A stretch of 63,516 bases of DNA from Macrostomum lignano (GCA_002269645.1 NIVC01002639.1:62485-126000), one strand, 5' to 3'; counted from the stretch's first letter, positions 39,201-63,516 are shown. The notes: generated by a model not told the origin, from the letters alone. Numbers and translations: made by a program.

Positions 39201-42200
39201 GCTAGATGTGAGTGAGGGTGCCAGCTAGATCTGTGTGACAGTCCCAGCTAGATCTGAGTGAGTGAGAGTCCCAGCTAGATGTGAGTGAGGGTGCCAGCTA
39301 GATCTGTGTGAGAGTGTCAGCTAGATGTGAGTGAGAGTGCCAGCTAGATCTGAGTGAGAGTGTCAGCTAGATGTGAGTGAGAGTGCCAGCTAGATCTGAG
39401 TGAGGGTGCCAGCTAGATCTGAGTGAGAGTGTCAGCTAGATCTGTGTGAGAGTGCCAGCTAGATCTGAGTGAGAGTGCCAGCTAGATCTGTGTGAGGGTG
39501 CCAGCTAGATCTGAGTGAGAGTGCCAGCTAGATCTGTGTGAGGGTGCCAGCTAAATCTGTCTGAGATTGCACAGGTTCCCAGGTTGAAGTCAGTAGGTGG
39601 GTTGCATCAGTCGAGAAAGCCACATCAAAAGCAAAAATAGCACTAAGCAAATCCAAGTTTTACCTGGCTGTGACTCATAAATATGCTGGATTGAACCAAC
39701 ACAATGGCCTATTATTACCGAAAAGAACAGTTGAAAGCAGTTCCCAGAGGCTGGATTAATCAGGGTCTTCTCAAAGGCTGCTTTTGTGCTCTATTTTAGC
39801 ATTGCTACTACCAGGACATCTGCTTCCGGCACAGTGGATTCCCTTAACCGGTTCTGACTGCTCACAAACTGCACCCTCTGCCCCGAACCCCCGGTTCACT
39901 CTATTCATAGATTTGCAGAATCTCCCAGTTGCCTGTCTGCAACAATAATTCATCCATTTTTTAACTTCATAAAAGAATACAAAATTTAGGTTGAATGTGG
40001 GCGGTTACTAAATTTAGTTACTGTCGGTGCATTTACGATCTTCAGTTTACATTCATAGCTTATTTACAGCCAGAGATGCTCTGCTAACGCAATGCCCATC
40101 ACTGACTCCTTACCCCTGACTCTTTATGCCTGACTCTTCACGCGTGACTCTCCTCACCCCTGACTCTCCTCACCCCTGACTCTCCTCACCCCTGACTCTC
40201 TGTCTTTACCCTGACTCTCCTTACCCCTGACTCTCTGTCTTCACCCTGACTCTCCTTACCCCTGACTCTCCTTACCCCTTGACTCTCCTTACCCCTGACT
40301 CTCTTCACCCTGACTCTCCTTACCCCTGACTCTCCTTACCCCTGACTCTCCTTACCCCTGACTCTCCTTACCCCTGACTCTCCTTACCCCTGACTCTCCT
40401 TACCCCTGACTCTCCTTACCCCTGACTCTCCTTAGCCCTGACTCTCCTTACCCCTCTCTCCTTACCCCTGACTCTTTATGCCTGACTCTCCTTACCCCTG
40501 ACTCTTCACGCCTGACTCTCCTTACCCCTGACTCTTTATGCCTGACTCTCCTTACCCCTGACTCTTTATGCCTGACTCTCCTTACCCCTGACTCTTCACG
40601 CCTGACTCTCCTTACCCCTGACTCTCCTTACCCCTGACTCTCCTTACCCCTCTCTCCTTACCCCTGACTCTTTATGCCTGACCCTCCTTACCCCTGACTC
40701 TTCACCCCTGACTCTTCATCCCTGACTCTCCTTACCACGCCTGACTCTTCACGCCTGACTCTTCTATCTTCCAGTCGAGTCCGTGGCGCCGCGCTCCCGG
40801 CGCGGACGCCTGCCCAGGTCTCTCGGCGCCCCTGGAGTTGCAGCTGTCGCAGCTGATGCCCGGCCAAGATTTCCAGTTGCTAAGCGAACCATTCGAAGTT
40901 CGCCGCTTCCCGTTCGGTCCGCCTGACTGCCTTGCCAATCTGCCGGAGTCCGGCGATGACGTCATCTCGGTGTCCGTTCCCTGGCTTGAGTCCGGCTTGG
41001 AAACTGCTGATGATGCCGAATTGACAGTGACCGGCTGTTTCCTCTGGTGGGATCTGCTGATGGACCCCTGGCCGGAGGCTGAGCTGCTCAGCACGGAGCC
41101 GGCCTGGGTAGCGGCTGGCGGAGTGGCCCAGTTCCGCGAGCACTGGATGCAGTCGGTGCACTTCTTCCCGACGGTCAGGCGCCTCTACCGGGACCAGCGG
41201 GACTCGTTGAAACTGCTGCACTGGCACGACGGTTACAGCAACTATTTTGATTTATTACCTGACTCTGCCGCCTCTCCCGCTCCGCCTGCGGCTCGGTTCT
41301 GCTCCTGCGGCATCCATCAGACTGTTAATAGGGCCAGACTAGCGGAAACTCAAGATCCCAGTTATTCTAGTGGTCATGTAGATTGGATTAAATCCGTATT
41401 GGAACTCTGTCCTACCGATCGGGCTTTAGCAACCGTGGGAGATCTGTGCATCCTGCCGCATCTCCTGGCGTCTGCGGCGATCGACCGTCAGCCGCTTCTG
41501 TGCGTTGAGCCCCGTCGGCGCTGCCGGGAGGCTGTTATTGAATCGAACCAACTGCTGCTGTCATCTGGCAGGATTGTTGCCGAGTTGCCTAAGCTGGCCG
41601 AGCTGATGGATGGGGGCTACGGTGGATTGATTTTATTAGGTGAGTTTTGGCCTCGCCTTGTTAAACTCGTGTCTGTTACCTGTTAGATATGTAACTGCTG
41701 TCTGTTAGACGTGTCTGTTATCTATTGAACAGGTTTATATTACCTGTTAGACAGACGTCTGTTACCTGTTAGACGGGGGCTGTTATTTGTTAGACAGATG
41801 TCAGTTACCTGTTAGACAGGTTTCAGTTCAGTTACCTGTTGGACATGTTTCAGTTACCTGTTGCACAGGTTTCAGTTACCTGTTACACAGGTTTCAGTTA
41901 CCTGTTGGACATGTTTCAGTTACCTGTTACACAGGTTTCAGTTACCTGTTGGACAGGTTTCAGCTACCTGTTGGACATGTTTCAGCTACCTGTTGGACAG
42001 GTTTCAGTTACCTGTTACACAGGTTTCAGTTACCTGTTACACAGGTTTCAGTTACCTGGTTGACAGGTGTCTGTTACCTGTTAGGTGTCAGTTACCTGTT
42101 AGACAGGTGTCAGTTATCTGTTAGACAGGTATCTGTTACCTGTTAGACAGGTGTCAGTTACCTGTTAGACATGTCAGTTATCCGTTTGACAAGGGCTGTT

Positions 42201-48600: not shown

Positions 48601-51600
48601 CTGTAATCAGCTGGTTTCAGGTCTTGAGCTCAAGTGTCAGATTCAATCGACAAGTGTCAGCTTGAATCCGATAGTGTCAGGCTCTGTGTGTCAATCATAC
48701 AATTGTACCCCATATTACTTTCTGCACTATTGAGTACAGACCTAGGCAGCCTAGCTAGACAAATTTGAAAGAATTGACTCGTTGACACTGCAAGCGCGGA
48801 GCACGGCAAGGTGTCAAATAAGGTTAAAAGCATGTCTTGCTAATGTCTTGATGGTAAGGTGTTTGCTCATCAAATTTACAATGCTCGCTTAGCTTTATTG
48901 CCTTGTGTGTTTTATTTATGCAAATGGCCTTTAATGCCCCAAACCCATTGGCAGAAAGCTCGGAGCTTGACTATTACGAAGTATTAATTATTACTATTAT
49001 TGGGTGGCTAGAGCATTGACGACCCTAAGTCACGATTTTTAACTGGGTAATTGAATAGTCTTTTATCCTCCGGAAATAAGCCGATCAGAAGTAGACATCC
49101 TTTGGAGAATATAGGCTAGAGGTAAGAATAAAATGGATAATCAAGGATAGAAGGTAGAATGAAATGTAGAATCAAGGGTAGAATGAACTGTAGAATCGAG
49201 GGTAGAATGAAATGTAGAATCAATGGTAGAATGAACTGTAGAATCGAGGGTAGAATGAACTGTAAAGTCGAGGGTAGAATGAACTGTAGAATCGAGGGTA
49301 GAATGAACTGTAAAGTCGAGGGTAGAATGAAATGTAGAATCAAGGGTAGAATGAACTGTAGAATCGAGGGTAGAATGAAATGTAGAATCAATGGTAGAAT
49401 GAACTGTAGAATCGAGGGTAGAATGAACTGTAAAGTCGAGGGTAGAATGAACTGTAGAATCGAGGGTAGAATGAACTGTAGAATAGAGGGTAGAATGAAA
49501 TGTAGAATCCAGAGTAGAATGAACTGTAGAATAGAGGGTAGAATCAATTGTAGAATAGAGGGTAGAATCAACTGTAGAATAGAGGGTAGAATCAACTGTA
49601 GAATAGAGGGTAGAATCAACTGTAGAATAGAGGGTAGAATCAACTGTAGAATAGAGGGTAGAATCAACTGTAGAATAGAGGGTAGAATCAACTGTAGAAT
49701 AGAGGATAGAATCAACTGTAGAAAAGAGGGTAGAATCAACTGTAGAATAGAGGGTAGAATCAACTGTAGAATAGAGGGTAGAATCAACTGTAGAATAGAG
49801 GGTAGAATCAACTGTAGAATAGAGGGTAGAATCAACTGTAGAAAAGAGGGTAGAATCAACTGTAGAATAGAGGGTAGAATCAACTGTAGAATAGAGGGTA
49901 GAATCAACTGTAGAATAGAGGGTATTGCGGCATGAGTTGCAGTTGCAGGATTTCTCCATCACTCGAATATGCTCAGCAAGTTTCGAGCTGTCACTGCAAT
50001 GATATGTCGCTACTTCAAGACGAAACCTCAATCCGATCATGCGACGCAGATAAAAGTACATTGGAGAGTAGCGTCGAGGGAGGTACGAGAAAGCGAGAAA
50101 AAGCAAAAAAGCTCATCATTTTGTACTTTTCAAACTAAACGATCCTCAGTTCTCTCCCTGTGGCTCAAAGCAGCCCCTCGGTCGGGGAGGGGGATGAGGG
50201 GGCAGAGTGCCTAGCGAGTGCACTTTCTGATGACGTCAATGTGCCCTGTTGGCGCGAGCAATTTGCGTGAGCAGGAGGCGGCGGAGGTGGGGCGTGGCAA
50301 TGGGAAGATTCGCTGTTGAGAGAGTGAGGCACGGAGGTGCTCCCCGGCTCAAAGCTAGGGAAGAGTGCACCACTCGGCAGTTGGCGCGGAGGTGAGGGAA
50401 GCTTCTAGTCCCCGCTCTGTCCCATAAGCCCCCCTCTGCCCGTGGCTGAACTATCATAGCAACTCTCTCCCCGGCAGGTTCTAAATTTAGATATCTGGCA
50501 ACGCAAACCCCCCCCCGTGGCCTGTCAGAGACAGACAAATTGTATTTTGTAGAAGCAGCAAGCAGAGAGCTGGGGAGACAAAAGTTGTGGAAACAAAAGA
50601 GTTCAGGCCCTGACCGTGACTTGATTGTTGGGGGGGCGGAAAGCATAGGTCGGGTTTAGCCTTGTGTATTAAGCGGTATCTGAGACTCTGAGAGGTCCCA
50701 GTGAACTTTAAAAAGCATTCTGATCCCTGATTTTTGTTTAACAGTAAACGTTGGATTCACTTGCGTTTACTTCTATCGGTGTTAGTAAAACTGCAGGTAG
50801 AATAAGGTCACTGCAATGTCAGATATCAGTGCCAAATAAATTCTTCCATTGTTTCACAACTCAATCGCTCAGTGGCGCACCTGTTGAGCACTCAATGCTT
50901 CCAATTCAGAATTGTAAATTGTTTTTTGCATGACTGATTTCTGAAAGCTCCAGTTCTCAGTCGAACACTTTCTCCCACTCATGTCTCCCCAGTCCCACTC
51001 TCACCCTCAAAATCCTCACCCTCTATCACCCTCTCACCCTCTATTACCCCTCTCACCCTCTATCACCCTTCTCACTCTCTATCACCCTTCTCAAACTCTA
51101 TCACCCTTCTCACCCTCTATCACCCTTCTCACTCTCTATCAGCCTTCTCAAACTCTATCACCCGTCTCACCCTCTATCACCCTTCTCACCCTCTATCACC
51201 CTTCTCACCCTCTATCACCCTTCTCACCCTCTATCACCCTTCTCACCCTCTATCACCCTTCTCACCCTCTATCACCCTTCTCACCCTCTATCAACATTCT
51301 CACCCTCTATTACCCCTCTCACCCTCTATCACCCTTCTCACTCTCTATCAGCCTTCTCAAACTCTATCACCCGTCTCACCCTCTATCACCCTTCTCACCC
51401 TCTATCACCCTTCTCACCCTCTATCACCCTTCTCACCCTCTATCACCCTTCTCACCCTCTATCACCCTTCTCACCCTCTATCACCCGTCTCACCCTCTAT
51501 CACCCTTCTCACCCTCTATTACCCCTCTCACCCTCTATCACCCTTCTCACTCTCTATCACCCCTCTCACCCTCTATCACCCTTCTCACCCTCTATCACCC

Positions 51601-52303
51601 CTCTAACCCTCTATCAGCCATCTCTCTATCACCCATCTCACCCTCTATCACCCCTCTCCCCCTCTATCTCCCTCTCAACCTCCACTATGCCTCTTACCCT
51701 CTATCACCCCTCTTACCCTCTATCACCCCTCTTACCCTCTATCACCCCTCTTACCCTCCATCACCCCTCTCACTCTCTATCAGCCCTATCACCCTCCGTC
51801 ATTTCTCTCACCCTTTACCACCCCTCTCAGCCTCTGCATCTTTCTCCTGATAAAACACAACACTCTATCGTTCTGACCACTGACCTTGAGAATGACTGCG
51901 GGCACAGGTGACACTCGTACGGCCTGGTGTTGCTGTGCAGCCGAACGTGCCTATTGAGCATATCGCTTCGGGTGAAACTGCGCCCGCAGAACTGGCACAG
52001 GTGGCCGCCGCTGCCGGAAGCGGTTGCTGGGGATTTCGACGCAGCAGATGGAGCTCTTGCTGGCTTTTGCTGCCTCCGATGCGGCTGCTGCGGAGGGAAT
52101 ACAAAATGCGGCGACAATTGCTGCTGCTGCTGCTGCTGCTGTTGTTGTTGCTGCAGTTGCTGCTGCTGCTGCAAGAAGGCCGCATTGTTGGGCGTCTGCG
52201 GTGCGCTCTGGCACATTCGAAATTGCTCCGCAAAAAAGTAAAAATTCGACTGCTGCTGCGTGTGATGTTGCTGCTGCCTCTGGAGCTGGTGCATTCTTAG
52301 TGC

Positions 52304-52346
<43 letters not shown>

Positions 52347-53014
52347 CCCTCCATCGTGCCGAGACTGAACGGTGACGGCATCGGAGAGAACGGATCGGAC
52401 TCGAAATCAACCGACGGATGACTCGACGAACTATTCGAGCCTAACCGACGCTGGTCCGGCATCGAAGCGGAGCTCGAGTGTCGGATCTGCGGCGGTACGG
52501 CGAGCAGTCCGGAGCCGCTGCCGGCCGCCGCTTGGGCTGACGGTTCCTCCCGACCTGATAAGTAGCGGTCTCGGAGGAGCTTCTTGAAGCCGCCAGCCTG
52601 ACCGACAGCGTCCGAGGACGGTTGCTGCTGCTGCGGAGGTGCATGCAGCGGCGGTGGTGGCAGCGGAGGTTGAAAGAATGCCTGCTGCGGCTGCGGCGGC
52701 GGTGGCGGCTGCTGCTGCTGTTCAAGCCTTGCTGCTTCAGCCGATGAGCCACTGCTATTTCTACGCTTCATTCGTTTCTGATAGATTTGGGCTTGACTCA
52801 TCTTGTCCAGGAGGCCAGAGAAGTCCCGGTGCGGCTGTTGCTTTTGCTTCGTCATCTCCTGCTCCTGCTGCTTCAGCTGAACCGATTTGCCAGCAGCTGC
52901 CGCCGCCGAGTGATCAAAGTCGAAGTTCAACTGCCGTTTGACTCCGCGGATCAGAGGGGAAATGACGCTGCCGGCCGACTGTGGCGGCTCTGGCGGGGAA
53001 GCCTCGCCAGACAT
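45673..53014 (-). CDS. klu: Klumpfuss-like (EGR/WT1-related) C2H2 zinc-finger transcription factor, 2 coding exons, about 443 aa
   Basis: Exon 53014-51885 (poly-Gln/Pro/Ala N-terminus, then CQFCGRSFTRSDMLNRHVRLH..CHLCPQSFS; donor AG|GTCAGT, phase 2) joins exon 45874-45673 (TTCAG|A; RSDHLSTHMRTHTGEKPYICSVCNYSACRRDMITRHMKVH), which is absent from the ORF track. The RSDML/RSDHLST/ACRRDMITRH helices match klumpfuss as I recall it. Confidence 0.88.
46165..47845. repeat. 48/46-bp satellite in the klu intron, with 286-bp higher-order repeat
   Basis: AGACTGCATGGGTTTAAAGAGTGGAATGCTATCGATGATTCCAGACAC. Confidence 0.97.
49148..49922. repeat. 24-bp (2 x 12) minisatellite in the klu intron
   Basis: GTAGAATCAACTGTAGAATAGAGG. 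Confidence 0.97.
50990..51830. repeat. 19-bp pyrimidine-rich minisatellite next to the klu donor
   Basis: CTCTATCACCCTTCTCACC. Confidence 0.95.
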
Positions 53015-54990: not shown

Positions 54991-55079
54991 CACCCGTAGA
55001 CACAAAAATATCCAGAAAAAAGCCAGAGAATCAAAAGGTTCAAAATGAATTGAGAGTCAGATTGGTCAGAACAATAGCC

Positions 55080-55495
55080 CGAGAGAGGTCAGGAAGAGTC
55101 GGGAAGAATCGGAGAGGTCACAGAGAGGTCAGGAAAAGTCAGAAAGAGTCAGGGAGGTCAGAGAGAGGTCAGGAAGAGTCAAGAAGAGTCAGAGAGGTCA
55201 CAGAGAGGTCAGGAAGAGTCAGGAAGAGAGTCAGAGAAGTCAGAGAGAGGTCAGGAAGAGTCAGGAAGAGTCAGAGAGGTCAGAGAGAGGTCAGGAAGAG
55301 TCAGGAAGAGAGTCAGAGAAGTCAGAGAGAGGTCAGGAAGAGTCAGGAAGAGAGTCAGAGAAGTCAGAGAGAGGTCAGGAAGAGTCAGGAAGAGAGTCAG
55401 AGAGGTCAGAGAGAGGTCAGGAAAAGTCAGACAGAGTCAGAGAGGTCAGAGAGATGTCATGTAGAGTCAGAGAGGTCAGAGAGAGGTCATGTAGA
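55080..55495. repeat. Purine-rich AGGTCA/AGAGTCA degenerate repeat
   Basis: AGAGGTCAGAGAGAGGTCAGGAAGAGTCAGG variants. Confidence 0.93.
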
Positions 55496-56089
55496 GCATA
55501 AAAGTTGAAAAAGAGATCTAAGGAGCAGGCAGTCTAAGGGAGAACAAAAGCAAAGGGACAGAGCATCAAAAGGTGCTTTGCCAGCTGAAGATGCAGAGCC
55601 AGATGGGGAGCCAGATGAAGAGGTCTAGAACGGAGAAACGGATTTGCAGTAAAACTGTAGCCTTCACATGGAAATCTATACAGCTCAGGAAATGATTATT
55701 TTGCTTCTATTATTAGGGATGGTGCGTCAATAAGAAGCGAACTAGGAGGAGGACTCGTGACGCACATGCCGCATCAGCAGCTGCTAGTGCGACTTCCGCC
55801 TGCTTCTCCTCTCGCACCGCCCAGTCCATTACGAAATTCAAGCTAAGCAAGGGCGAACATCTCGGCGTTTTGCCATCGAATTTCGCTACTCGAGTTACTT
55901 TATTAAACAAAATTTCCAATTTAGATAGTAGGGGGAGTAAGATAAAAACGCTTGGCGCTTAATCCTCACAAATCCTGCGCCCGGGTAGGCTGTGTCCGGT
56001 GACTGCTCAACGCCTACAGCGCTTTCAGCTTGGAAAGAATTATTTTATTCCTTTGCTCTCAGCTTTTCAGTGCAATTTGCAATGCCAGT

Positions 56090-56784
<695 letters not shown>

Positions 56785-57421
56785 TGGCTTGAACCGATCC
56801 AGGCCGCCAGGAGTTCTTGTGCTGACCTCATTGTCAGCAAAAGTACCGCTGGAGCTGCATCCGCCGCTGGCAACCCGGATGCGCCGCCCCCTTCCCCCTG
56901 GTGCAGGCTCGCATGTATGACGCCAAAGTGCGCAGTCGCTTCTGTGAATGCAATCTCAAAAAAGTGGGACTCCGGGCCAACACTTCCTTCCTTCCTTCCC
57001 GGGCACAGAAGGGGCACCTGAGGTCCATTGTCGCTCAAAAAATGATGGATTTAAATGAACTTGGAGGATAATCGAGGCCCTTGCAGTTACAGCTAGGAAA
57101 GGTATTTGAGACCAATCACATTGACAGTCTTCTGCTCAAGAAATTTCCCCTCATTACTAATTTTATTGTCGGGCTGTCAGCAGCTCAATACACCGCGTAC
57201 TTTTGATCGATCTTTCTTCTTACTACTCAACGATCGTTAACTAAAGCTCCGTTCCCACACGATTTTCTATTTTTGACTAACAAATCTATTTACTGCTACT
57301 TTTACTGAGTAGTGCAATTCAGACATGTTCGTAAGATTATCCACTTTGTTTCCGTCAACAGAGATACGAGCGTAGCCTTACTGACAAGCAGGCGACGTTC
57401 CTGTCCAACGGATTTATTAAT

Positions 57422-58068
57422 GTCTTACTGGTGATTCTCCTGTCTTACTGGTGATTCTCCTGTCTTACTGGTGATTCTCCTGTCTTACTGGTGATTCTCC
57501 TGTCTTACTGGTGATTCTCCTGTCTAACTGGTGATTCTCCTGTCTAACTGGTGATTCTCCTGTCTAACTGGTGATTCTCCTGTCTTACTGGTGATTCTCC
57601 TGTCTTACTGGTGATTCTCCTGTCTTACTGGTGATTCTCCTGTCTCACTGGTGATTCTCCTGTCTTACTGGTGATTCTCCTGTCTTACTGGTGATTCTCC
57701 TGTCTTACTGGTGATGTTCCTGTCTTACTGGTGATGTTCCTGTCTTACTGGTGAGGTTCCTGTCTTACTGGTGATGTTCCTGTCTTACTGGTGATGTTCC
57801 TGTCTTACTGGTGATGTTCCTGTCTTACTGGTGATTCTCCTGTCTCACTGGTGATTCTCCTGTCTTACTGGTGATGTTCCTGTCTTACTGGTGATTCTCC
57901 TGTCTTACTGGTGATGTTCCTGTCTTACTGGTGAGGTTCCTGTCTTACTGGTGAGGTTCCTGTCTTACTGGTGATGTTCCTGTCTTACTGGTGAGGTTCC
58001 TGTCTTACTGGTGAGGTTCCTGTCTTACTGGTGATGTTCCTGTCTTACTGGTGATTCTCCTGTCTCCT
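57422..58068. repeat. 20-bp minisatellite
   Basis: TCTTACTGGTGATTCTCCTG and the GATGTTCCTG variant. Confidence 0.97.
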
Positions 58069-58074
58069 GTCTTT

Positions 58075-58320
58075 GGAGGGATATCAGGGCGGTTACTATG
58101 GCATCGTTACCTCTAGGGAAAAATCCGCATTGAGGAATTCCAACTTTGCCTCTCCGGTGTCGAGAATGCGGAGCACTTTATCTGTGAATGCCCCGCCTTT
58201 ACTCAGGAGAGGCTCACCTACCTCGGCCCAAACCCGGACCTCTCCGACGTTTTTAAGCTCGAGAATGTCTGGCAGCTCCTCCGCTACCTGAGGGCTGCCG
58301 GGCGAGCGACCTTCCACCTC
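58075..58320 (+). mobile_element. LINE ORF2 3-prime fragment with CCHC zinc knuckle remnant (I/R1/Nimb-like)
   Basis: Frame reading CLSGVENAEHFICECPAFTQERLTYLG..LLRYLRAAGR, typical of a non-LTR ORF2 C-terminus; upstream part disrupted. Confidence 0.6.
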
Positions 58321-59232
58321 CTGGACTCTCCGGAGGGGGACCGCGCTGCGGACACCGGCACCACCGGATCTCTGCGCGACACCGCAACACCAGCTGCCCG
58401 TGGTCGCCAGTGGTCAGTGGAATGGACGTCAACTCCTTCCCCCGCTGTACCCCAGAGCAAGTTAAGTAAACCCTTAGCTAAGTAAAATCTTAAGAGCGGG
58501 CAAATTCTGAATGAAAAATCAGCTAGAAGCGATAGAATTTGTAATCTGAAACTAAATTTCAAATGCGAGCCATGTCTACCAACAGATATTTCATATTTTG
58601 TGAGACTAGTTACTGACTCTCGCATTATTAGCTAGTGAGTCACAGTGACAGACCAAGCGGCCAGCAACCCAACATTCGTTGCCAAAATTTGAGGACTCGT
58701 TGAACTCAAAGCTGGCTGAATCTCTAGCAAGGGCTCCTCAGGTGGTGGTTGAGTCTTGCTGAGCAAATTTTACCGAATCGGCGACTTTCCTTTGTGTCTT
58801 TGAAGTTGCAACCTTCCCGCCCTCGGAGCACCATCTGCAGCTTTTGCTGGCTCAAAGCACCCCTCCCCCCAAATCAATTTGGAGCCAAAAATATCAAAGT
58901 CTCCGATGCGTGGCTTCCTGAGATTTTCGAAATTTCTGGTAGCACCTGGGCCACGATAATTTCTCTGCGCGCAGAATGTGGCTGCAGCTGTTCGACTCGT
59001 TTCTGCGTTGGCGGTGCTCCTAAAGGCGGGGCTGCCGAAATGCTGTAGCAGCACTCAGCCAACACAGCGCCTAAACAGCTAGAACTCCTTGTTATCGTAG
59101 GCGCTGTCAAATGCAGGTTGCTCCATGCTTCAAGGATTTTATGATCCTAGAAAGGAAACCGCAGACGGACATTCTTACGCAACCTGCAAGCTGCCAGACG
59201 GATTCAAAGTGGATGCAGCGTTTCAATCTGAT

Positions 59233-60060
59233 CTAGTCAATCTGAGCAATTCCCATTCAGTCCCTAGTCAATCTGAGCAATTCCCATTCAGTCCCTAGTC
59301 AATCTGAGCAATTCCCATTCAGTCCCTAGTCAATCTGAGCAATTCCCATTGAGCCCCTAGTCAATCTAAGCAATTCCCATTGAGCCCCTAGTCAATCTGA
59401 GCAATTCCCATTGAGCCCCTAGTCAATCTAAGCAATTCCCATTGAGTCCCTAGTCAATCTGAGCAATTCCCATTGAGTCCTAGTCAATCTGAGCAATTCC
59501 CATTCAGTCCCTAGTCAATCTGAGCAATTCCCATTGAGTCCTAGTCAATCTGAGCAATTCCCATTCAGTCCTAGTCAATTTGAGCAATTCCCATTCAGTC
59601 CCTAGTCAATTTGAGCAATTCCCATTCAGTCCTAGTCAATCTGAGCAATTCCCATTGAGTCCTAGTCAATCTGAGCAATTCCCATTGAGAGTCAATCTGA
59701 GCAATTCCCATTGAGTCCTAGTCAATCTGAGCAATTCCCATTGAGTCCCTAGTCAATCTGAGCAACTCCCATTGAGTCCCTAGTCAATCTGAGCAATTCC
59801 CATTGAGTCCCTAGTCAATCTGAGCAACTCCCATTGAGTCCCTAGTCAATCTAAGCAATTCCCATTGAGTCCCTAGTCAATCTGAGCAATTCCCATTGAG
59901 TCCTAGTCAATCTGAGCAATTCCCATTGAGTCCCTAGTCAATCTGAGCAACTCCCATTGAGTCCCTAGTCAATCTGAGCAACTCCCATTGAGTCCCTAGT
60001 CAATCTGAGCAATTCCCATTGAGTCCCTAGTCAATCTGAGCAACTCCCATTGAGTCCCTA
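59233..60060. repeat. 31/30-bp minisatellite
   Basis: GTCCCTAGTCAATCTGAGCAATTCCCATTGA. Confidence 0.97.
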
Positions 60061-60142
60061 ATCGAACAGATAAATAAACTGCCTAGTTTGTAAGCGTTAT
60101 TAATGCCTACATGATGGGTGATGCCGCAGGGAGAGGGACTTC

Positions 60143-60612
60143 TGGGCGCAGGGGGAGAGAGGGAGAGAGGCAGGGAGAGAGGCAGGGAGAGAGGCAGGGA
60201 GAGAGGCAGGGAGAGAGGCAGGGAGAGAGGCAGGGAGAAAGGCAGGGAGAGAGGTATGATGCAGGGAGTGGGCAAGATTGGCGTTGTGCGTTGGCGGGTG
60301 ACAGACAATTAAGCGGGCGATATCGATACTGATTACACACCCAATGGTAGTATGGTCTCTAGGAGATGGAAATAATTTTTCTGCTTAAAGCTTTTTGGTT
60401 GCACCTGGGGCAGTAGAGAGCGGAGTGCAGTATGGAGTGCAGTAGGGCGTGCAGTAGGGAGTGCAGTAGGGAGTGCAGTAGGGAGTGCAGTAGGGAGTGC
60501 AGTAGGGAGTGCTATAGGCAGTGCAGTATGGAGTGCAGTAGGGAGTGCAGTAGGCAGTGCAGTAGGGAGTGCTATAGGCAGTGCAGTAGGGAGTGCTATA
60601 GGCAGTGCAGTT
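60143..60612. repeat. Two short arrays: (GAGAGGCAGG)n 60143-60252 and (GGAGTGCAGTAG)n 60418-60612
   Basis: 10-bp and 12-bp units visible directly. Confidence 0.93.
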
Positions 60613-61007
60613 AGGGGAGTGCTGCAGGTGTCTGCAATTTAGTCATCATTTGTGTGGCTGCGGAACTGCTGAAATGGCGTAGGTTCTTTGAAGCCTCAAA
60701 GGATGCTGGGGACCCAAAATGGCTGCCTTCAATCATTCATAAATACAGATTGCACCTACAGTTCACGTTTTTCCCTGCAGAGAAAAGCAGAAAATCAGAA
60801 AGGAGGGACCAGATGGCTGTTGCTTCTTTATAATTGTCTTCAAAAGCAATCTTAGAATTTCTGCACCTGTTTCAGACTATTTTATCCATTTGCATGGAAT
60901 TATCCTATGGAAATTTCTTGTCAATGCTTGTTTATTGGTCTCGGGCCGATGGCCAAAATTGATTCTCTGTGATCCGGTGACGCCCACGATCGACGAGAGA
61001 GCAACAC

Positions 61008-61014
61008 TATAAAG
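61008..61014 (+). promoter_or_regulatory. Candidate TATA box of the prohormone-like gene (CRE half-site TGACG at 60978-60982)
   Basis: TATAAAG 110 bp upstream of the ATG at 61124, in a GC-richer context. Confidence 0.5.
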
Positions 61015-61123
61015 CCAGCAGGTCCGCGGGCCCGAGAGAGCTCCTCACTGAGTCACTTGCAGAGTCACCTGCACCAAGTCTCTTCTCCAGCTATTGTATT
61101 GCAGCGAAAACGAATTAAGGGCA

Positions 61124-61548
61124 ATGTGTCGCGTTATCCGAAAGGCTGTGCTCTGTGCTAGCGTCGTATGGGTTGTAGCCATGGTAACGCAGACGCCCGG
61201 TGTAGCCGAGTGTTGTAAGTACTCTGATATTCTGTGTGATGACTCTATCGCATTTAAACTACGATTACCTCGAAACATATACTACAGTATTTAATGACTG
61301 TTATTGATTTATTAATTTTTCTAGCACCTATTCGACTGTCTGATTTTGACGAGGACCAGGAGAAGCCCAGGGTGATAGCCGAGCAGCGCCAGTGCGCCGT
61401 GGAGTGGCTGGTCCGCCACCTGCTGGCCCATCGTGCCAGGCAGGCCGACTGGAGCGAGGACGGCGACGTTGACCCGTCGATGTTCTCAGAGCCGCCGCGG
61501 CGTCATCATCCGCGAGTGAGGCGGCTCTACAGCCGGTTTCGGATCTGA
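61124..61548 (+). CDS. Putative secreted peptide precursor (prohormone-like), 2 exons, 104 aa
   Basis: Exons 61124-61214 and 61325-61548, 110-bp intron GTAAGT..TTTTTCTAG, phase 1. Basic N-region plus hydrophobic core (MCRVIRK-AVLCASVVWVVAMV), acidic spacer, C-terminal RVRR-LYSRFRI*. TATAAAG upstream and AATAAA overlapping the stop. Confidence 0.72.
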
Positions 61549-61553
61549 ATAAA
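61548..61553 (+). terminator. Polyadenylation signal overlapping the stop codon
   Basis: TGAATAAA: the A of TGA (61548) starts AATAAA. Confidence 0.55.
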
Positions 61554-63269
61554 ACAGCGATCGATGGAGATGATGCAGCCCCATCTCCTATAATTGGGCC
61601 GTCAGCTACACCATGTGACTTTGGAATTGTTATTTCGTAGCGTAAATTACTGTATATTTATTAGGTATAGGGAAGTCCTGATTGACATCTCCGAAATATC
61701 TACTATCAATATAGTATAGAGCTCGCTTGAAGTGCGCGTCCACTGTTAGCCCCTTACGCTTCGCTAATAAATACAAAGTCCTATTCAAACTTTGAGAGAA
61801 AGCAATATTAATAAAATTAGTTGACAAGAAGATATTTTTTGTCTGCAGCATCAAAAACTTTTGGATTGTTGATAAAATTGTTTTTCTTGCATAACCGGCC
61901 GCTGATCGGATATAAGTGACTTCATGTAATCAAGTCGGATAAAATGAACGCGTAGCAATGGAAGTCGAAGTTAAAGTTTAAACCAGTGGCAGCTATAGAT
62001 AAATAAAGCCTTGTTATTCGTTATAATAGTAGATATATTTTAGATTTAGTTCGAAAATCATTACTATAATTCGATTAAAGCCGAGGACAGACAGAAATTG
62101 TGCATGCAAGTGTGAGATAGTTAGAATTTGGGGAAATAACGCGTAGCTTTTTAAAGAATATATTTTGTTACTTTTAAAAAGGAAAAACTCGTAAAATAAA
62201 AGTATAAAAAGCTACAATTAACAGTTAAATGTGTGATTTTTATGTTGTCTTCAAAAGCAAAAAAAGCTAAAGCTAGCAGGCCATGCAGCAATAAAATGTT
62301 TTTTTTCTTCAGAATAAGTATATCATTCCTCCTTAACCTAGGACCACTAGCAGTATATCATCACGCTACACTCAAAGATCGTATTTTTTAGGCCAATTTC
62401 CGTAAAAAAACACTGCAGAGGTAAAAAAATCTTTTTTTCTTCACAAATTTTTTTTCATGGAAATCGGCCTTGTCTTGTAATATCTTGTAATATTTTTCAG
62501 ATGACTAATTTTTTAAGAAATTCAAAGCATTATATAGCTAAAATCAGATTCAAAGCCACTGAAGGTTGGTTGTTTGCCAAAATCATATGTGGGATTTTTA
62601 TTGTACATGCAGGCTTGTAATAACTAATAAACTACATTCTAAATTTCTTACTTGAATCATAATGCTTCATTTTAGACTACAAAGCAGCTTGTAAAAATAT
62701 AATACGCTCGTAGTTACATGTAGCTACATAATATGCACATTAAGAGGCCGTTTCATGCAGATAAATTTAAGACGCTTTATAATTTTTAGAACCATTTTGC
62801 GAACTACAAAGTTTTCTCAGCTTCCTTATAGCTAAATTGAGAGGTGAATAAGTTACAAAATTTCCTTTTTTACGAATCAAGGCTTCTTAAAAGCAGCTGT
62901 TGAAATCCTGCATAGCCAATGTGATTTCTAATCAAATTAGTAACAGAAATGAGGATTTGTTATACTGCTTTGTTTATTGTTCGGTGATTCTGAACCTTTA
63001 ATAGGGACAAAATTTTAATTGGGATGACGTAATATCGTAACTTCCGACCTGCAGTACAAAGCCTAATTATAATGGTTTCCAGCCAAGCAAATTAACAAAC
63101 TTATACGGATAAAAGGCAAGCACGTTTGATTAACATGGGATTAAAGATCAAATAAGCTGAAATTTTGCTACGAAGAATTTTCTGTTGTTTTTGTTGTTTC
63201 TGTTGACAGTAGTTTCGTTGTCAAGCCCAACTATTATCGGCTTTAAAAAAGCTTCATTATTTTCATTCG

Positions 63270-63413
63270 CTAGGGCTGATCCTCATTTCTTGGTGCTGCC
63301 GGCTGCTCCGGCCTTCGTCTTGGCTCGCCGTCTTCATCATATTCATCAAGAAAGCCGAGATGTTGCTCAGCGGCGGCCTCTTCTACTACTGGAGCGGCTG
63401 GGCCCTGAATCAG
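63270..63413 (-). CDS. Probable terminal coding exon of a gene extending beyond the right end of the window
   Basis: CCCGCAG acceptor at 63420-63414 (same style as the other genes here) followed by 47 sense codons LIQGPAAPVVEEAAAEQHLGFLDEYDEDGEPRRRPEQPAAPRNEDQP and TAG, then an AT-rich UTR-like stretch. No family recognised. Confidence 0.5.
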   Translation of the reverse strand: MIQGPAAPVVEEAAAEQHLGFLDEYDEDGEPRRRPEQPAAPRNEDQP

Positions 63414-63516
63414 CTGCGGGCGTTGTGTTGTTGTTTAGCAATCGGTATTTTGAGGGGCAGAAGTTTTAGCGGTTGAGGGGCTAGAAAACTGAGGCGCCAA
63501 CGAGTGTACATTCGGG

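What the first reader, a model, noticed from the sequence alone, without database searches (positions are those of the whole stretch)
60978..61553. Hidden two-exon prohormone-like gene releasing a candidate C-terminal peptide LYSRFRI
Seen: two ORF-track fragments join through a canonical 110-bp intron into a 104-aa protein, MCRVIRKAVLCASVVWVVAMVTQTPGVAECSPIRLSDFDEDQEKPRVIAEQRQCAVEWLVRHLLAHRARQADWSEDGDVDPSMFSEPPRRHHPRVRRLYSRFRI, with TATAAAG and a CRE half-site upstream and AATAAA on the stop. Established: signal peptide + acidic spacer + R-X-R-R convertase site + short terminal peptide is the standard architecture of neuropeptide/pheromone precursors. Inference: it encodes a non-amidated heptapeptide (no terminal Gly) that I cannot assign to a known family; an RR-HHPRV-RR peptide is also possible.
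Basis: partly seen in the sequence, partly recalled or inferred. Interest (0 to 1): 0.75.

Follow-up and report, generated by a model that had tools for sequence, protein, structure and literature searches.

The report
Annotated small secreted orphan flatworm gene
The two-exon gene is real, but it is already in GenBank and UniProt as an uncharacterised secreted protein of the flatworm Macrostomum lignano, and nothing available here shows that it is a hormone precursor releasing LYSRFRI.

Summary
ATG 61124 to 61214 joins 61325 to 61548 across a 110-bp GTAAGT...TCTAG phase-1 intron and gives exactly the 104-aa protein quoted. The stop is TGA 61546-61548, and AATAAA (61548-61553) overlaps its last base.

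The gene is not hidden. The identical protein is GenBank PAA56311.1 (BOX15_Mlig005115g2, Macrostomum lignano) and UniProt A0A1I8H701 ("Secreted protein"). Two more genomic copies keep the same structure.

An N-terminal signal-peptide-like segment, an acidic middle and an Arg-rich tail (RR89-90, RVRR94-97) are all present. The protein therefore meets the loose operational criteria used for planarian prohormones.

It has no homologue outside M. lignano among 1.84 billion representative proteins, and no Pfam or PDB match. It has no amidation signal, and I could retrieve no expression or peptide data.

The paralogues conserve the middle helix and the tail equally, so they cannot say which part is functional.

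Best reading: a lineage-restricted small secreted pre-pro-protein, probably clipped by a furin/PC-type convertase, of unknown role. The LYSRFRI neuropeptide idea is possible (about 0.1) but untested. Ordinary; low interest.

The parts
60978..60982 (+). TGACG pentamer (CRE half-site-like); no evidence of function
   Evidence: Present. It is conserved in L002, but so is all flanking DNA at 96-98%. A 5-mer is expected by chance about every 0.5 kb.
61008..61014 (+). TATAAAG, likely TATA box
   Evidence: It lies 44-50 nt upstream of the most 5' base of the annotated transcript of the sister copy: P0005, a 'partial' CDS, starts at the equivalent of 61058. It is identical in all three copies.
61058..61123 (+). 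Minimal 5' UTR (colinear with the genome, no upstream ATG; in-frame stop TGA 61049-61051)
   Evidence: P0005 (BOX15_Mlig005115g1, partial) is the in-frame translation of these 66 nt followed by the same protein.
61124..61214 (+). Exon 1 CDS, Met1-Cys30 plus the first base of the Ser31 codon. It encodes the signal-peptide-like segment: n-region R3/R6/K7, h-region A8-V21, c-region TQTPGVA(EC).
61215..61324 (+). Intron: 110 bp, phase 1, GTAAGT...TTTTTCTAG, 29% GC
   Evidence: The paralogue L002 has a 103-bp intron with the same GTAAGT/TTCTAG ends.
61325..61548 (+). Exon 2 CDS, rest of Ser31 to Ile104 plus stop TGA 61546-61548
   Evidence: This matches the GenBank gene span L001 5001-5425.
61327..61380 (+). 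Acidic spacer (Pro32-Ala49), the fast-diverging part
   Evidence: The 61325-61391 stretch is 88% identical to L002 and carries a 6-nt in-frame indel, while the rest of the CDS is 97.5% identical. This stretch is absent from UniProt A0A1I8JLH3.
61366..61443 (+). Predicted helix (res. 45-70, containing Cys54), invariant from Glu50 on among the copies
   Evidence: AlphaFold2 secondary structure, with low confidence (pLDDT about 50-55). Alignment.
61498..61545 (+). Arg-rich basic tail RRHHPRVRRLYSRFRI. RR89-90 = 61498-61503; RVRR94-97 = 61513-61524; LYSRFRI = 61525-61545.
   Evidence: Seven of the 13 Arg are in the last 16 residues (P=0.004) and there are no acidic residues there (P=0.025). One H-to-Q change and one synonymous change separate it from L002.
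61548..61553 (+). AATAAA overlapping the last base of the stop; candidate poly(A) signal (use not shown). A second AATAAA lies at 61766-61771.

Best explanation
This is a genuine, already annotated, lineage-restricted gene of Macrostomum lignano (BOX15_Mlig005115g2). It encodes a 104-aa pre-pro-protein that enters the secretory pathway.

Shown:
- The two-exon structure.
- An identical public gene model.
- Three intact genomic copies.
- A signal-peptide-like N-terminus encoded by its own exon, followed by a phase-1 intron.
- Marked charge segregation: residues 30-88 have pI 4.6 and net charge -6, and the last 16 residues carry 7 Arg.

Inferred:
- The signal peptide is removed after Ala28 or Cys30.
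- Cys30 (if retained) and Cys54 form a loop around the variable acidic spacer.
- The exposed, probably disordered tail is cut by a furin/PC-type convertase at RVRR97 and/or RR90 and trimmed by a carboxypeptidase. That would separate an acidic, helix-containing piece of about 60 aa from short basic peptides (HHPRV, LYSRFRI, or the uncut 14-mer).

The sequence does not tell which piece, if any, is bioactive, or whether the producing cell is a neuron or a gland cell. I rate 'secreted protein gene' at about 0.85, 'convertase-processed' at about 0.5, and 'LYSRFRI is the active product' at about 0.1.
For: - Exact spliced translation.
- The identical protein is in GenBank and UniProt, where one source names it 'Secreted protein'.
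- Mlig_3_7 gene models are built from RNA-seq with StringTie/TACO/TBONE.
- Paralogous copies L002 and L003 keep the ORF, splice sites and frame. The exonic indel is in frame and the intron differs by 7 gapped positions, not a multiple of 3.
- Coding-like GC1/2/3. The annotated frame scores best of the three sense frames under a small M. lignano codon model.
- Hydropathy and the -3/-1 residues fit a signal peptide, and RR and RVRR are present.
- Arg clustering and acid depletion in the tail are non-random.
- A PC2 homologue is expressed in M. lignano neurons, so the processing machinery exists.
- The protein meets the three operational prohormone criteria of Collins et al. 2010: signal sequence, basic sites flanking a peptide, under 200 aa.
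Against: - No SignalP or NeuroPred run was possible. The signal peptide rests on heuristics and a database name.
- No direct junction reads, expression pattern or peptide data could be retrieved. The gene ids are absent from every supplement I searched.
- dN/dS between paralogues is 0.57 on only 17 substitutions, so purifying selection is not demonstrated.
- The codon-model score of the sense frame is tied with one antisense frame.
- The structure prediction has low confidence, mean pLDDT 49.
- Leu at P1' of RVRR|L is, from my memory of convertase specificity studies, not a preferred residue.
Confidence: 0.6

Rival explanations
1. One reading: a neuropeptide, hormone or pheromone prohormone made in neurons or neuroendocrine cells. 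PC2 cleavage at RVRR releases the non-amidated heptapeptide LYSRFRI (and/or HHPRV) as the signalling molecule.
For: - Signal peptide plus spacer plus RXRR plus a short C-terminal peptide.
- It satisfies the Collins et al. 2010 operational prohormone criteria.
- PC2 is present in M. lignano neurons.
- The tail is invariant across four distinct copies, apart from H92Q.
Against: - No similarity to any known neuropeptide family or to any protein outside M. lignano.
- No Gly amidation signal. Only one candidate peptide copy.
- The heptapeptide itself contains two further Arg.
- The site lies in a generally Arg-rich tail, so the motif is cheap: it appears in 6.8% of shuffles.
- The middle helix is conserved just as well as the tail.
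- No neural expression or MS evidence. The peptide string occurs nowhere in the searchable literature.
Confidence: 0.1
2. A gland-cell secretory product, for example prostate/seminal-fluid, pharyngeal, epidermal or adhesive gland. It acts as a small protein, and the basic tail serves as a matrix- or membrane-binding end rather than as a released hormone.
For: - M. lignano expresses many small, signal-peptide-bearing proteins without database hits in gland cells. For example, 31 of 76 prostate-limited transcripts had no BLAST hit, and 38 of 65 had SignalP signal peptides.
- Orphan status.
- A fast-diverging spacer.
- Base rates favour this class over neuropeptides (my inference).
Against: - No expression data.
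- Sequence k-mers and peptide strings from this gene are absent from the Weber et al. 2018 supplementary tables. That is a weak test, since only 27 kb of text is held.
- A furin-type site in a disordered tail would probably be cut in any secretory cell.
Confidence: 0.25
3. A host-defence (antimicrobial) peptide precursor. An anionic pro-piece neutralises a cationic C-terminal peptide (HHPRVRRLYSRFRI or RRHHPRVRRLYSRFRI), which is released at RR90.
For: Signal peptide, acidic pro-piece (pI 4.6, net -6) and an Arg-rich C-terminal 14-16-mer. From general knowledge, this layout is that of many AMP precursors, such as the dermaseptin and cathelicidin types.
Against: - The tail is not more amphipathic than its own shuffles: muH 0.37-0.53, shuffle P 0.19-0.48.
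- No homology to any AMP family.
- An internal RVRR would cut the candidate peptide in two.
Confidence: 0.08
4. A transcribed but functionally unconstrained young ORF, such as a recent de novo or decaying gene. Its prohormone-like look would be a by-product of a GC-rich (CGN-rich) exon.
For: - No homologue anywhere.
- dN/dS of 0.57-0.9 between copies.
- Low-confidence structure.
- Exon 2 is open in the antisense frame as well, and the codon model does not separate sense from antisense.
Against: - The ORF, splice sites and frame are intact in at least three copies, and the indel is in frame.
- A dedicated signal-peptide exon with a phase-1 intron.
- Non-random charge segregation.
- Coding-like GC3.
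Confidence: 0.12

Closest known systems
GenBank PAA56311.1 (BOX15_Mlig005115g2) / UniProt A0A1I8H701 'Secreted protein', Macrostomum lignano. Paralogues: PAA93572.1 (g1), PAA86872.1 (Mlig014483g1), A0A1I8JLH3.
   Same: PAA56311.1 is 100% identical over all 104 aa, with the same two-exon model on contig NIVC01002639.1. The paralogues are 88-99% identical and have the same neighbour, an ITPR/RyR-like gene.
   Different: Nothing differs: it is the same gene. The public records give no function ('hypothetical protein', 'Secreted protein').
Planarian peptide prohormones (Schmidtea mediterranea npp/spp/npy genes; Collins et al. 2010, PMC2953531)
   Same: Under 200 aa, a signal sequence, and basic cleavage sites flanking a short peptide. 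A PC2 homologue is present in the species.
   Different: - No sequence similarity to any of them.
- No amidation Gly.
- No MS-confirmed peptide.
- No shown neural expression.
- The candidate peptide sits in a generally Arg-rich tail.
Anionic-propiece / cationic-peptide precursors of host-defence peptides (general class; recalled, not tested by homology)
   Same: Signal peptide, acidic pro-region, dibasic site and a cationic C-terminal peptide.
   Different: No homology. The tail is not significantly amphipathic. An internal furin-type site lies in the would-be peptide.
M. lignano prostate-limited putative seminal fluid proteins (Mlig-pro1-76; Weber et al. 2018, PMC5977470)
   Same: Small, signal-peptide-bearing, often without any BLAST hit.
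   Different: No evidence that this gene is among them. Its expression site is unknown.

Membership tests
Flatworm peptide prohormones (operational definition of Collins et al. 2010) | N-terminal signal sequence | tested here: met
   Heuristic only. n-region of +3 charge, a 14-residue h-region with mean Kyte-Doolittle above 2, Pro/Gly in the c-region, and small residues at -3/-1 (G26/A28 or A28/C30). UniProt's name is 'Secreted protein'. SignalP was not available.
Flatworm peptide prohormones (operational definition of Collins et al. 2010) | Basic cleavage sites flanking a predicted or MS-confirmed peptide | tested here: met
   RR89-90 and RVRR94-97 flank HHPRV and precede LYSRFRI. The motif has low specificity in a tail that is 7/16 Arg.
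Flatworm peptide prohormones (operational definition of Collins et al. 2010) | Precursor shorter than 200 aa and not similar to a gene annotated otherwise | tested here: met
   104 aa. No Pfam, PDB or other homologue.
Flatworm peptide prohormones (operational definition of Collins et al. 2010) | Mature peptide detected (MS), or transcript expressed in neural/neuroendocrine cells | not testable with these tools
   No M. lignano peptidomics found. The gene ids are absent from the supplements searched.
Known neuropeptide families (FLP/RFamide, NPF/NPY, FxRIamide, calcitonin-type and others) | Sequence similarity of the peptide or precursor, and a C-terminal Gly amidation signal where the family is amidated | tested here: not met
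   No hits. The protein ends ...RFRI-stop with no Gly. The ...FRI end resembles FxRIamides only in 3 residues. The C-x5-C plus helix layout appears only in the 86-aa variant P0003, which has no Pro-amide end.
Furin/PC substrates | R-X-[K/R]-R motif in an accessible segment of a secretory protein | tested here: met
   RVRR94-97. Residues 70-80 just upstream fall below pLDDT 50, and the last 15 residues average only about 42-53. Actual cleavage is not testable here.
Cationic amphipathic host-defence peptides | Cationic peptide with significant amphipathicity | tested here: not met
   The tail is cationic, but its helical hydrophobic moment is within the shuffle distribution, P 0.19-0.48.
M. lignano seminal fluid protein candidates (Weber et al. 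2018) | Prostate-limited expression by ISH | tested here: inconclusive
   Peptide strings and 13-mers from the gene were not found in the held supplementary text. The transcript ids there (RNA815_*) cannot be mapped to this gene with these tools.

The most novel reading that the evidence does not exclude
The gene is a Macrostomum-specific signalling-peptide precursor. Its unusual non-amidated, Arg-rich C-terminal peptide (LYSRFRI or the 14-mer HHPRVRRLYSRFRI) acts as a neuropeptide or as a mate- or conspecific-directed pheromone in a hermaphrodite under strong sexual selection. It would be an orphan ligand with no counterpart in other flatworms.
Probability: 0.1. Interest if true: 0.45.

Novelty: already known. 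Interest (0 to 1): 0.15.

Why it matters
If the prohormone reading were right, it would add one lineage-specific, non-amidated peptide to the poorly charted peptide repertoire of M. lignano. This flatworm has transgenesis and RNAi, so a phenotype could be tested quickly.

As things stand it is one of many small orphan secreted proteins in a neopolyploid genome, and the gene model is already public. What this check adds is negative and clarifying:
- The gene is not hidden.
- No homologue exists outside the species in very large databases.
- The available paralogues cannot tell whether the helix or the tail is the functional part.

Tried and rejected
- Homology: word-indexed search of 5.8 billion proteins, exhaustive phmmer against 1.84 billion representatives, Pfam and PDB sequences. 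Only M. lignano's own copies turned up.
- Structure: AlphaFold2 on the 4-sequence alignment gave mean pLDDT 49. I ran no fold search, because a model this poor gives meaningless matches.
- Expression and literature: ids Mlig005115 and Mlig014483 are absent from the full-text library. They are also absent from the supplements of PMC5730564, PMC5816591, PMC12896417 and PMC5946080. PMC11398382 holds no supplements.
- Peptide strings (LYSRFRI, VEWLVRHLL and others) occur in no paper. Neither they nor 13-mers of the gene occur in the Weber 2018 supplements.
- McVeigh et al. 2009 (PMC2749192) is not held. No Macrostomum peptidomics exists in the library.
- Selection: Nei-Gojobori dN/dS between the window and L002 is 0.57 overall, on 11 non-synonymous and 6 synonymous changes. 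That is too few to separate the helix from the tail.
- Amphipathic-helix (AMP-like) idea: hydrophobic moments of the tail and the mid-helix are no higher than shuffles, so I rejected this as positive evidence.
- Calcitonin-like idea (C-x5-C ring plus helix): this layout is seen only in the 86-aa variant P0003, and there is no C-terminal amide signal. Rejected.
- Local paralogues or a repeat or TE origin: tblastn and blastn of the gene against the window find only the gene itself. No Rfam family lies in 55000-63516.
- Codon-usage frame test, trained on 742 codons: the annotated frame beats the two shifted sense frames but ties with one antisense frame, so it is only weakly informative.

Full report

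Yes. Reading the window and translating it shows the following.
- An ATG at 61124 opens exon 1 (61124-61214).
- A GTAAGT donor starts at 61215, and a TTTTTCTAG acceptor ends at 61324. The intron is 110 bp, phase 1.
- Exon 2 runs from 61325 to the stop TGA at 61546-61548.
- Reading through the intron instead meets stop codons after 56 codons.
- TGACG (60978-82), TATAAAG (61008-14) and AATAAA (61548-53) are all present. AATAAA shares one base with the stop, and a second AATAAA lies at 61766-71.
- No upstream ATG lies between the TATA box and the start codon, and an in-frame TGA lies at 61049-51.

**2. Is it more than chance, and is it "hidden"?**

It is real, and it is not hidden.
- A protein search returned three proteins, all from the flatworm Macrostomum lignano.
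- An exact look-up showed that the very same 104-aa sequence is GenBank PAA56311.1, "hypothetical protein BOX15_Mlig005115g2". It is also UniProt A0A1I8H701, "Secreted protein".
- The encoding contig, NIVC01002639.1, carries the gene at exactly the window position, 61124-61548.
- The Mlig_3_7 gene models behind that record were built from RNA-seq with StringTie, TACO and the TBONE boundary pipeline (PMC5730564). The splice junction therefore has indirect transcript support. I could not inspect reads directly.
- The "partial" model of the sister copy (P0005) begins 66 nt upstream of the ATG and is colinear with the genome. That puts the transcript start at or upstream of the equivalent of 61058, which is 44-50 nt downstream of the TATA box.

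**3. The copies.**

M. lignano is a neopolyploid with much duplicated sequence. I retrieved three genomic copies.
- The window copy (g2).
- L003 (g1), with one nucleotide difference in the CDS, giving Q42P.
- L002 (Mlig014483g1), with about 95% CDS identity and a 106-aa product.

All three copies:
- lie about 1.7 kb from the 3' end of a convergently oriented ITPR/RyR-like gene;
- keep the ATG, the GTAAGT donor, the TCTAG acceptor, the frame and the stop.

The only exonic indel is +6 nt (in frame). The intron differs by 7 gapped positions (110 vs 103 bp), which is not a multiple of three.

GC content is 56% and 65% in the exons against 29% in the intron. GC at codon positions 1/2/3 is 0.69/0.48/0.70, like other M. 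lignano coding sequence at 0.58/0.40/0.67. These points argue for a real coding gene.

There are caveats.
- The flanks are as conserved as the CDS (96-99%), so conservation of the promoter motifs means nothing.
- dN/dS between the window and L002 is 0.57, on 11 non-synonymous and 6 synonymous changes.
- Exon 2 is also open for 96 codons on the antisense strand.
- A small codon model ranks the annotated frame above the two shifted sense frames but level with one antisense frame.

**4. Anatomy of the protein.**

- Residues 1-28/30 have the layout of a signal peptide. There are three basic residues, then a 14-residue hydrophobic core (A8-V21), then TQTPGVA(EC) with small residues at -3/-1.
- This segment has an exon of its own followed by a phase-1 intron, a common arrangement in secreted-protein genes.
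- The rest of the protein comprises:
  - an acidic spacer (res. 31-49);
  - a predicted helix (res. 45-70, low confidence) containing Cys54;
  - an acidic, Pro-containing linker;
  - a strongly basic tail, RRHHPRVRRLYSRFRI.
- The charge segregation is non-random. Seven of 13 Arg fall in the last 16 residues (P=0.004), and none of the 14 acidic residues do (P=0.025).
- RR89-90 and RVRR94-97 are candidate convertase sites. Because the tail is so Arg-rich, however, an RX[KR]R leaving a 4-20-aa end piece appears in 6.8% of shuffles of the mature protein.
- There is no Gly before the stop, so no amidation.

**5. What the copies say about function.**

- Among four distinct protein sequences, the region from Glu50 to Glu75 is fully invariant. 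The tail is invariant except for H92Q in one copy.
- The signal peptide and, above all, the spacer vary.
- The spacer and the adjoining 3' half of the intron form a patch of 86-88% identity inside a locus that is otherwise 96-99% identical.
- One UniProt model (A0A1I8JLH3, 86 aa) lacks exactly the 18 spacer codons.
- The spacer therefore looks dispensable.
- With about 2.5% background divergence, invariance of a 27-codon block is not significant on its own.

**6. Relatives elsewhere.**

None were found.
- An exhaustive phmmer pass over 1.84 billion representative proteins returned only M. lignano's own cluster.
- Pfam and PDB sequences gave nothing.
- The peptide strings occur in no searchable paper.
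- Other Macrostomum species are probably not represented in these protein sets. "Orphan" here means no homologue in any other annotated flatworm or other organism. It does not mean no orthologue within the genus.

**7. How it most likely works.**

- I commit to a small secreted pre-pro-protein.
- The signal peptide is removed.
- The protein passes through the Golgi. There a furin-type site in a probably disordered tail is likely (about 0.5) to be cut, whichever cell type makes it.
- A PC2 homologue is expressed in M. lignano neurons (PMC4490696, PMC12435804).
- The protein formally meets the criteria Collins et al. used to accept planarian prohormones: a signal sequence, basic sites flanking a peptide, and under 200 aa (PMC2953531).
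- Those criteria are permissive, and in that study they were backed by cDNA and mass spectrometry, which are missing here.
- Against the specific LYSRFRI-neuropeptide idea:
  - no family resemblance;
  - no amidation;
  - a single peptide copy;
  - two more Arg inside the heptapeptide;
  - Leu at P1' (unfavourable, from my memory of convertase specificity);
  - a middle helix that is conserved equally well.
- M. lignano gland cells express many small signal-peptide proteins without database hits. For example, 31 of 76 prostate-limited transcripts had no BLAST hit (PMC5977470). By base rate, a gland secretory product is at least as likely as a neuropeptide.
- An antimicrobial-precursor reading fits the anionic/cationic layout, but amphipathicity does not support it.

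**8. Comparison with what is known, and novelty.**

- The closest known thing is the gene's own public record.
- In kind, it resembles flatworm prohormones in architecture only. It fails the one testable membership feature of any named neuropeptide family, namely sequence similarity or an amidation signal.
- The gene model is already known and its function is not.
- Even if the prohormone reading proved true, it would be a new member of a known kind.

**9. Verdict.**

"Hidden" is wrong, and the released-heptapeptide claim is untested.
- Interest is low (0.15).

Direct RNA-seq mapping, cell-type expression, Macrostomum orthologues and peptidomics would settle the question. They are listed under the next steps.

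Noticed in passing
window 55081-60622: The 5.5 kb upstream of the gene is almost entirely satellite or tandem-repeat DNA: an 82/40-mer array (55081-55483), (GATA)x174 (56090-56784), a 20-mer x32 (57421-58065), a 31-mer x27 (59233-60060), and 12-mers (60148-60254, 60422-60622). No gene is annotated there in GenBank.
   Followed up: partly
window 60432-60614 (+): The 12-mer repeat GGAGTGCAGTAG produces a 60-aa '[14 protein letters not shown]...' Cys-rich ORF. This is a repeat artefact, not a gene.
   Followed up: partly
window 61283-61391 vs L002: A patch covering the 3' half of the intron and the first ~19 codons of exon 2 is only 86-88% identical between paralogous copies and carries indels. 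Everything around it is 96-99% identical. This could mean locally accelerated evolution of the acidic spacer, or a gene-conversion boundary.
   Followed up: partly
window 61377-61379; UniProt A0A1I8JLH3 (P0003): An 86-aa public variant lacks exactly the 18 spacer codons, which turns Cys30-x23-Cys54 into C-x5-C directly ahead of the helix. In the window an in-frame AG at 61377-78 could give the same product, but it has no pyrimidine tract. I could not tell whether this is an alternative isoform, a deletion in another copy or a prediction artefact.
   Followed up: partly
window ~63270-63516 (-), continuing beyond the window (L001 7147-10425): This is the 3' end of a large ITPR/RyR-like calcium-channel gene (Pfam RIH_assoc, RYDR_ITPR, Ion_trans), convergent with the small gene. 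The same neighbour is present at all three paralogous loci.
   Followed up: partly
window 51827-53014 (-): A 395-aa ORF with C2H2 zinc-finger matches near its C-terminus.
   Followed up: no
window 40838-41686 (+): A 282-aa ORF with a sub-threshold match to the arginine methyltransferase oligomerisation subdomain (PRMT_C, 25.8 bits against a cut-off of 27).
   Followed up: no
window 49116-50106, both strands: Long overlapping ORFs on both strands give scattered, implausible Pfam matches (Bactofilin, CdrL_M, COX_ARM). This looks like low-complexity or repetitive sequence rather than genes.
   Followed up: no
window 61321-61610 (-): GC-rich exon 2 is open for 96 codons on the antisense strand. 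This is a reminder that ORF length is weak evidence in this region.
   Followed up: yes
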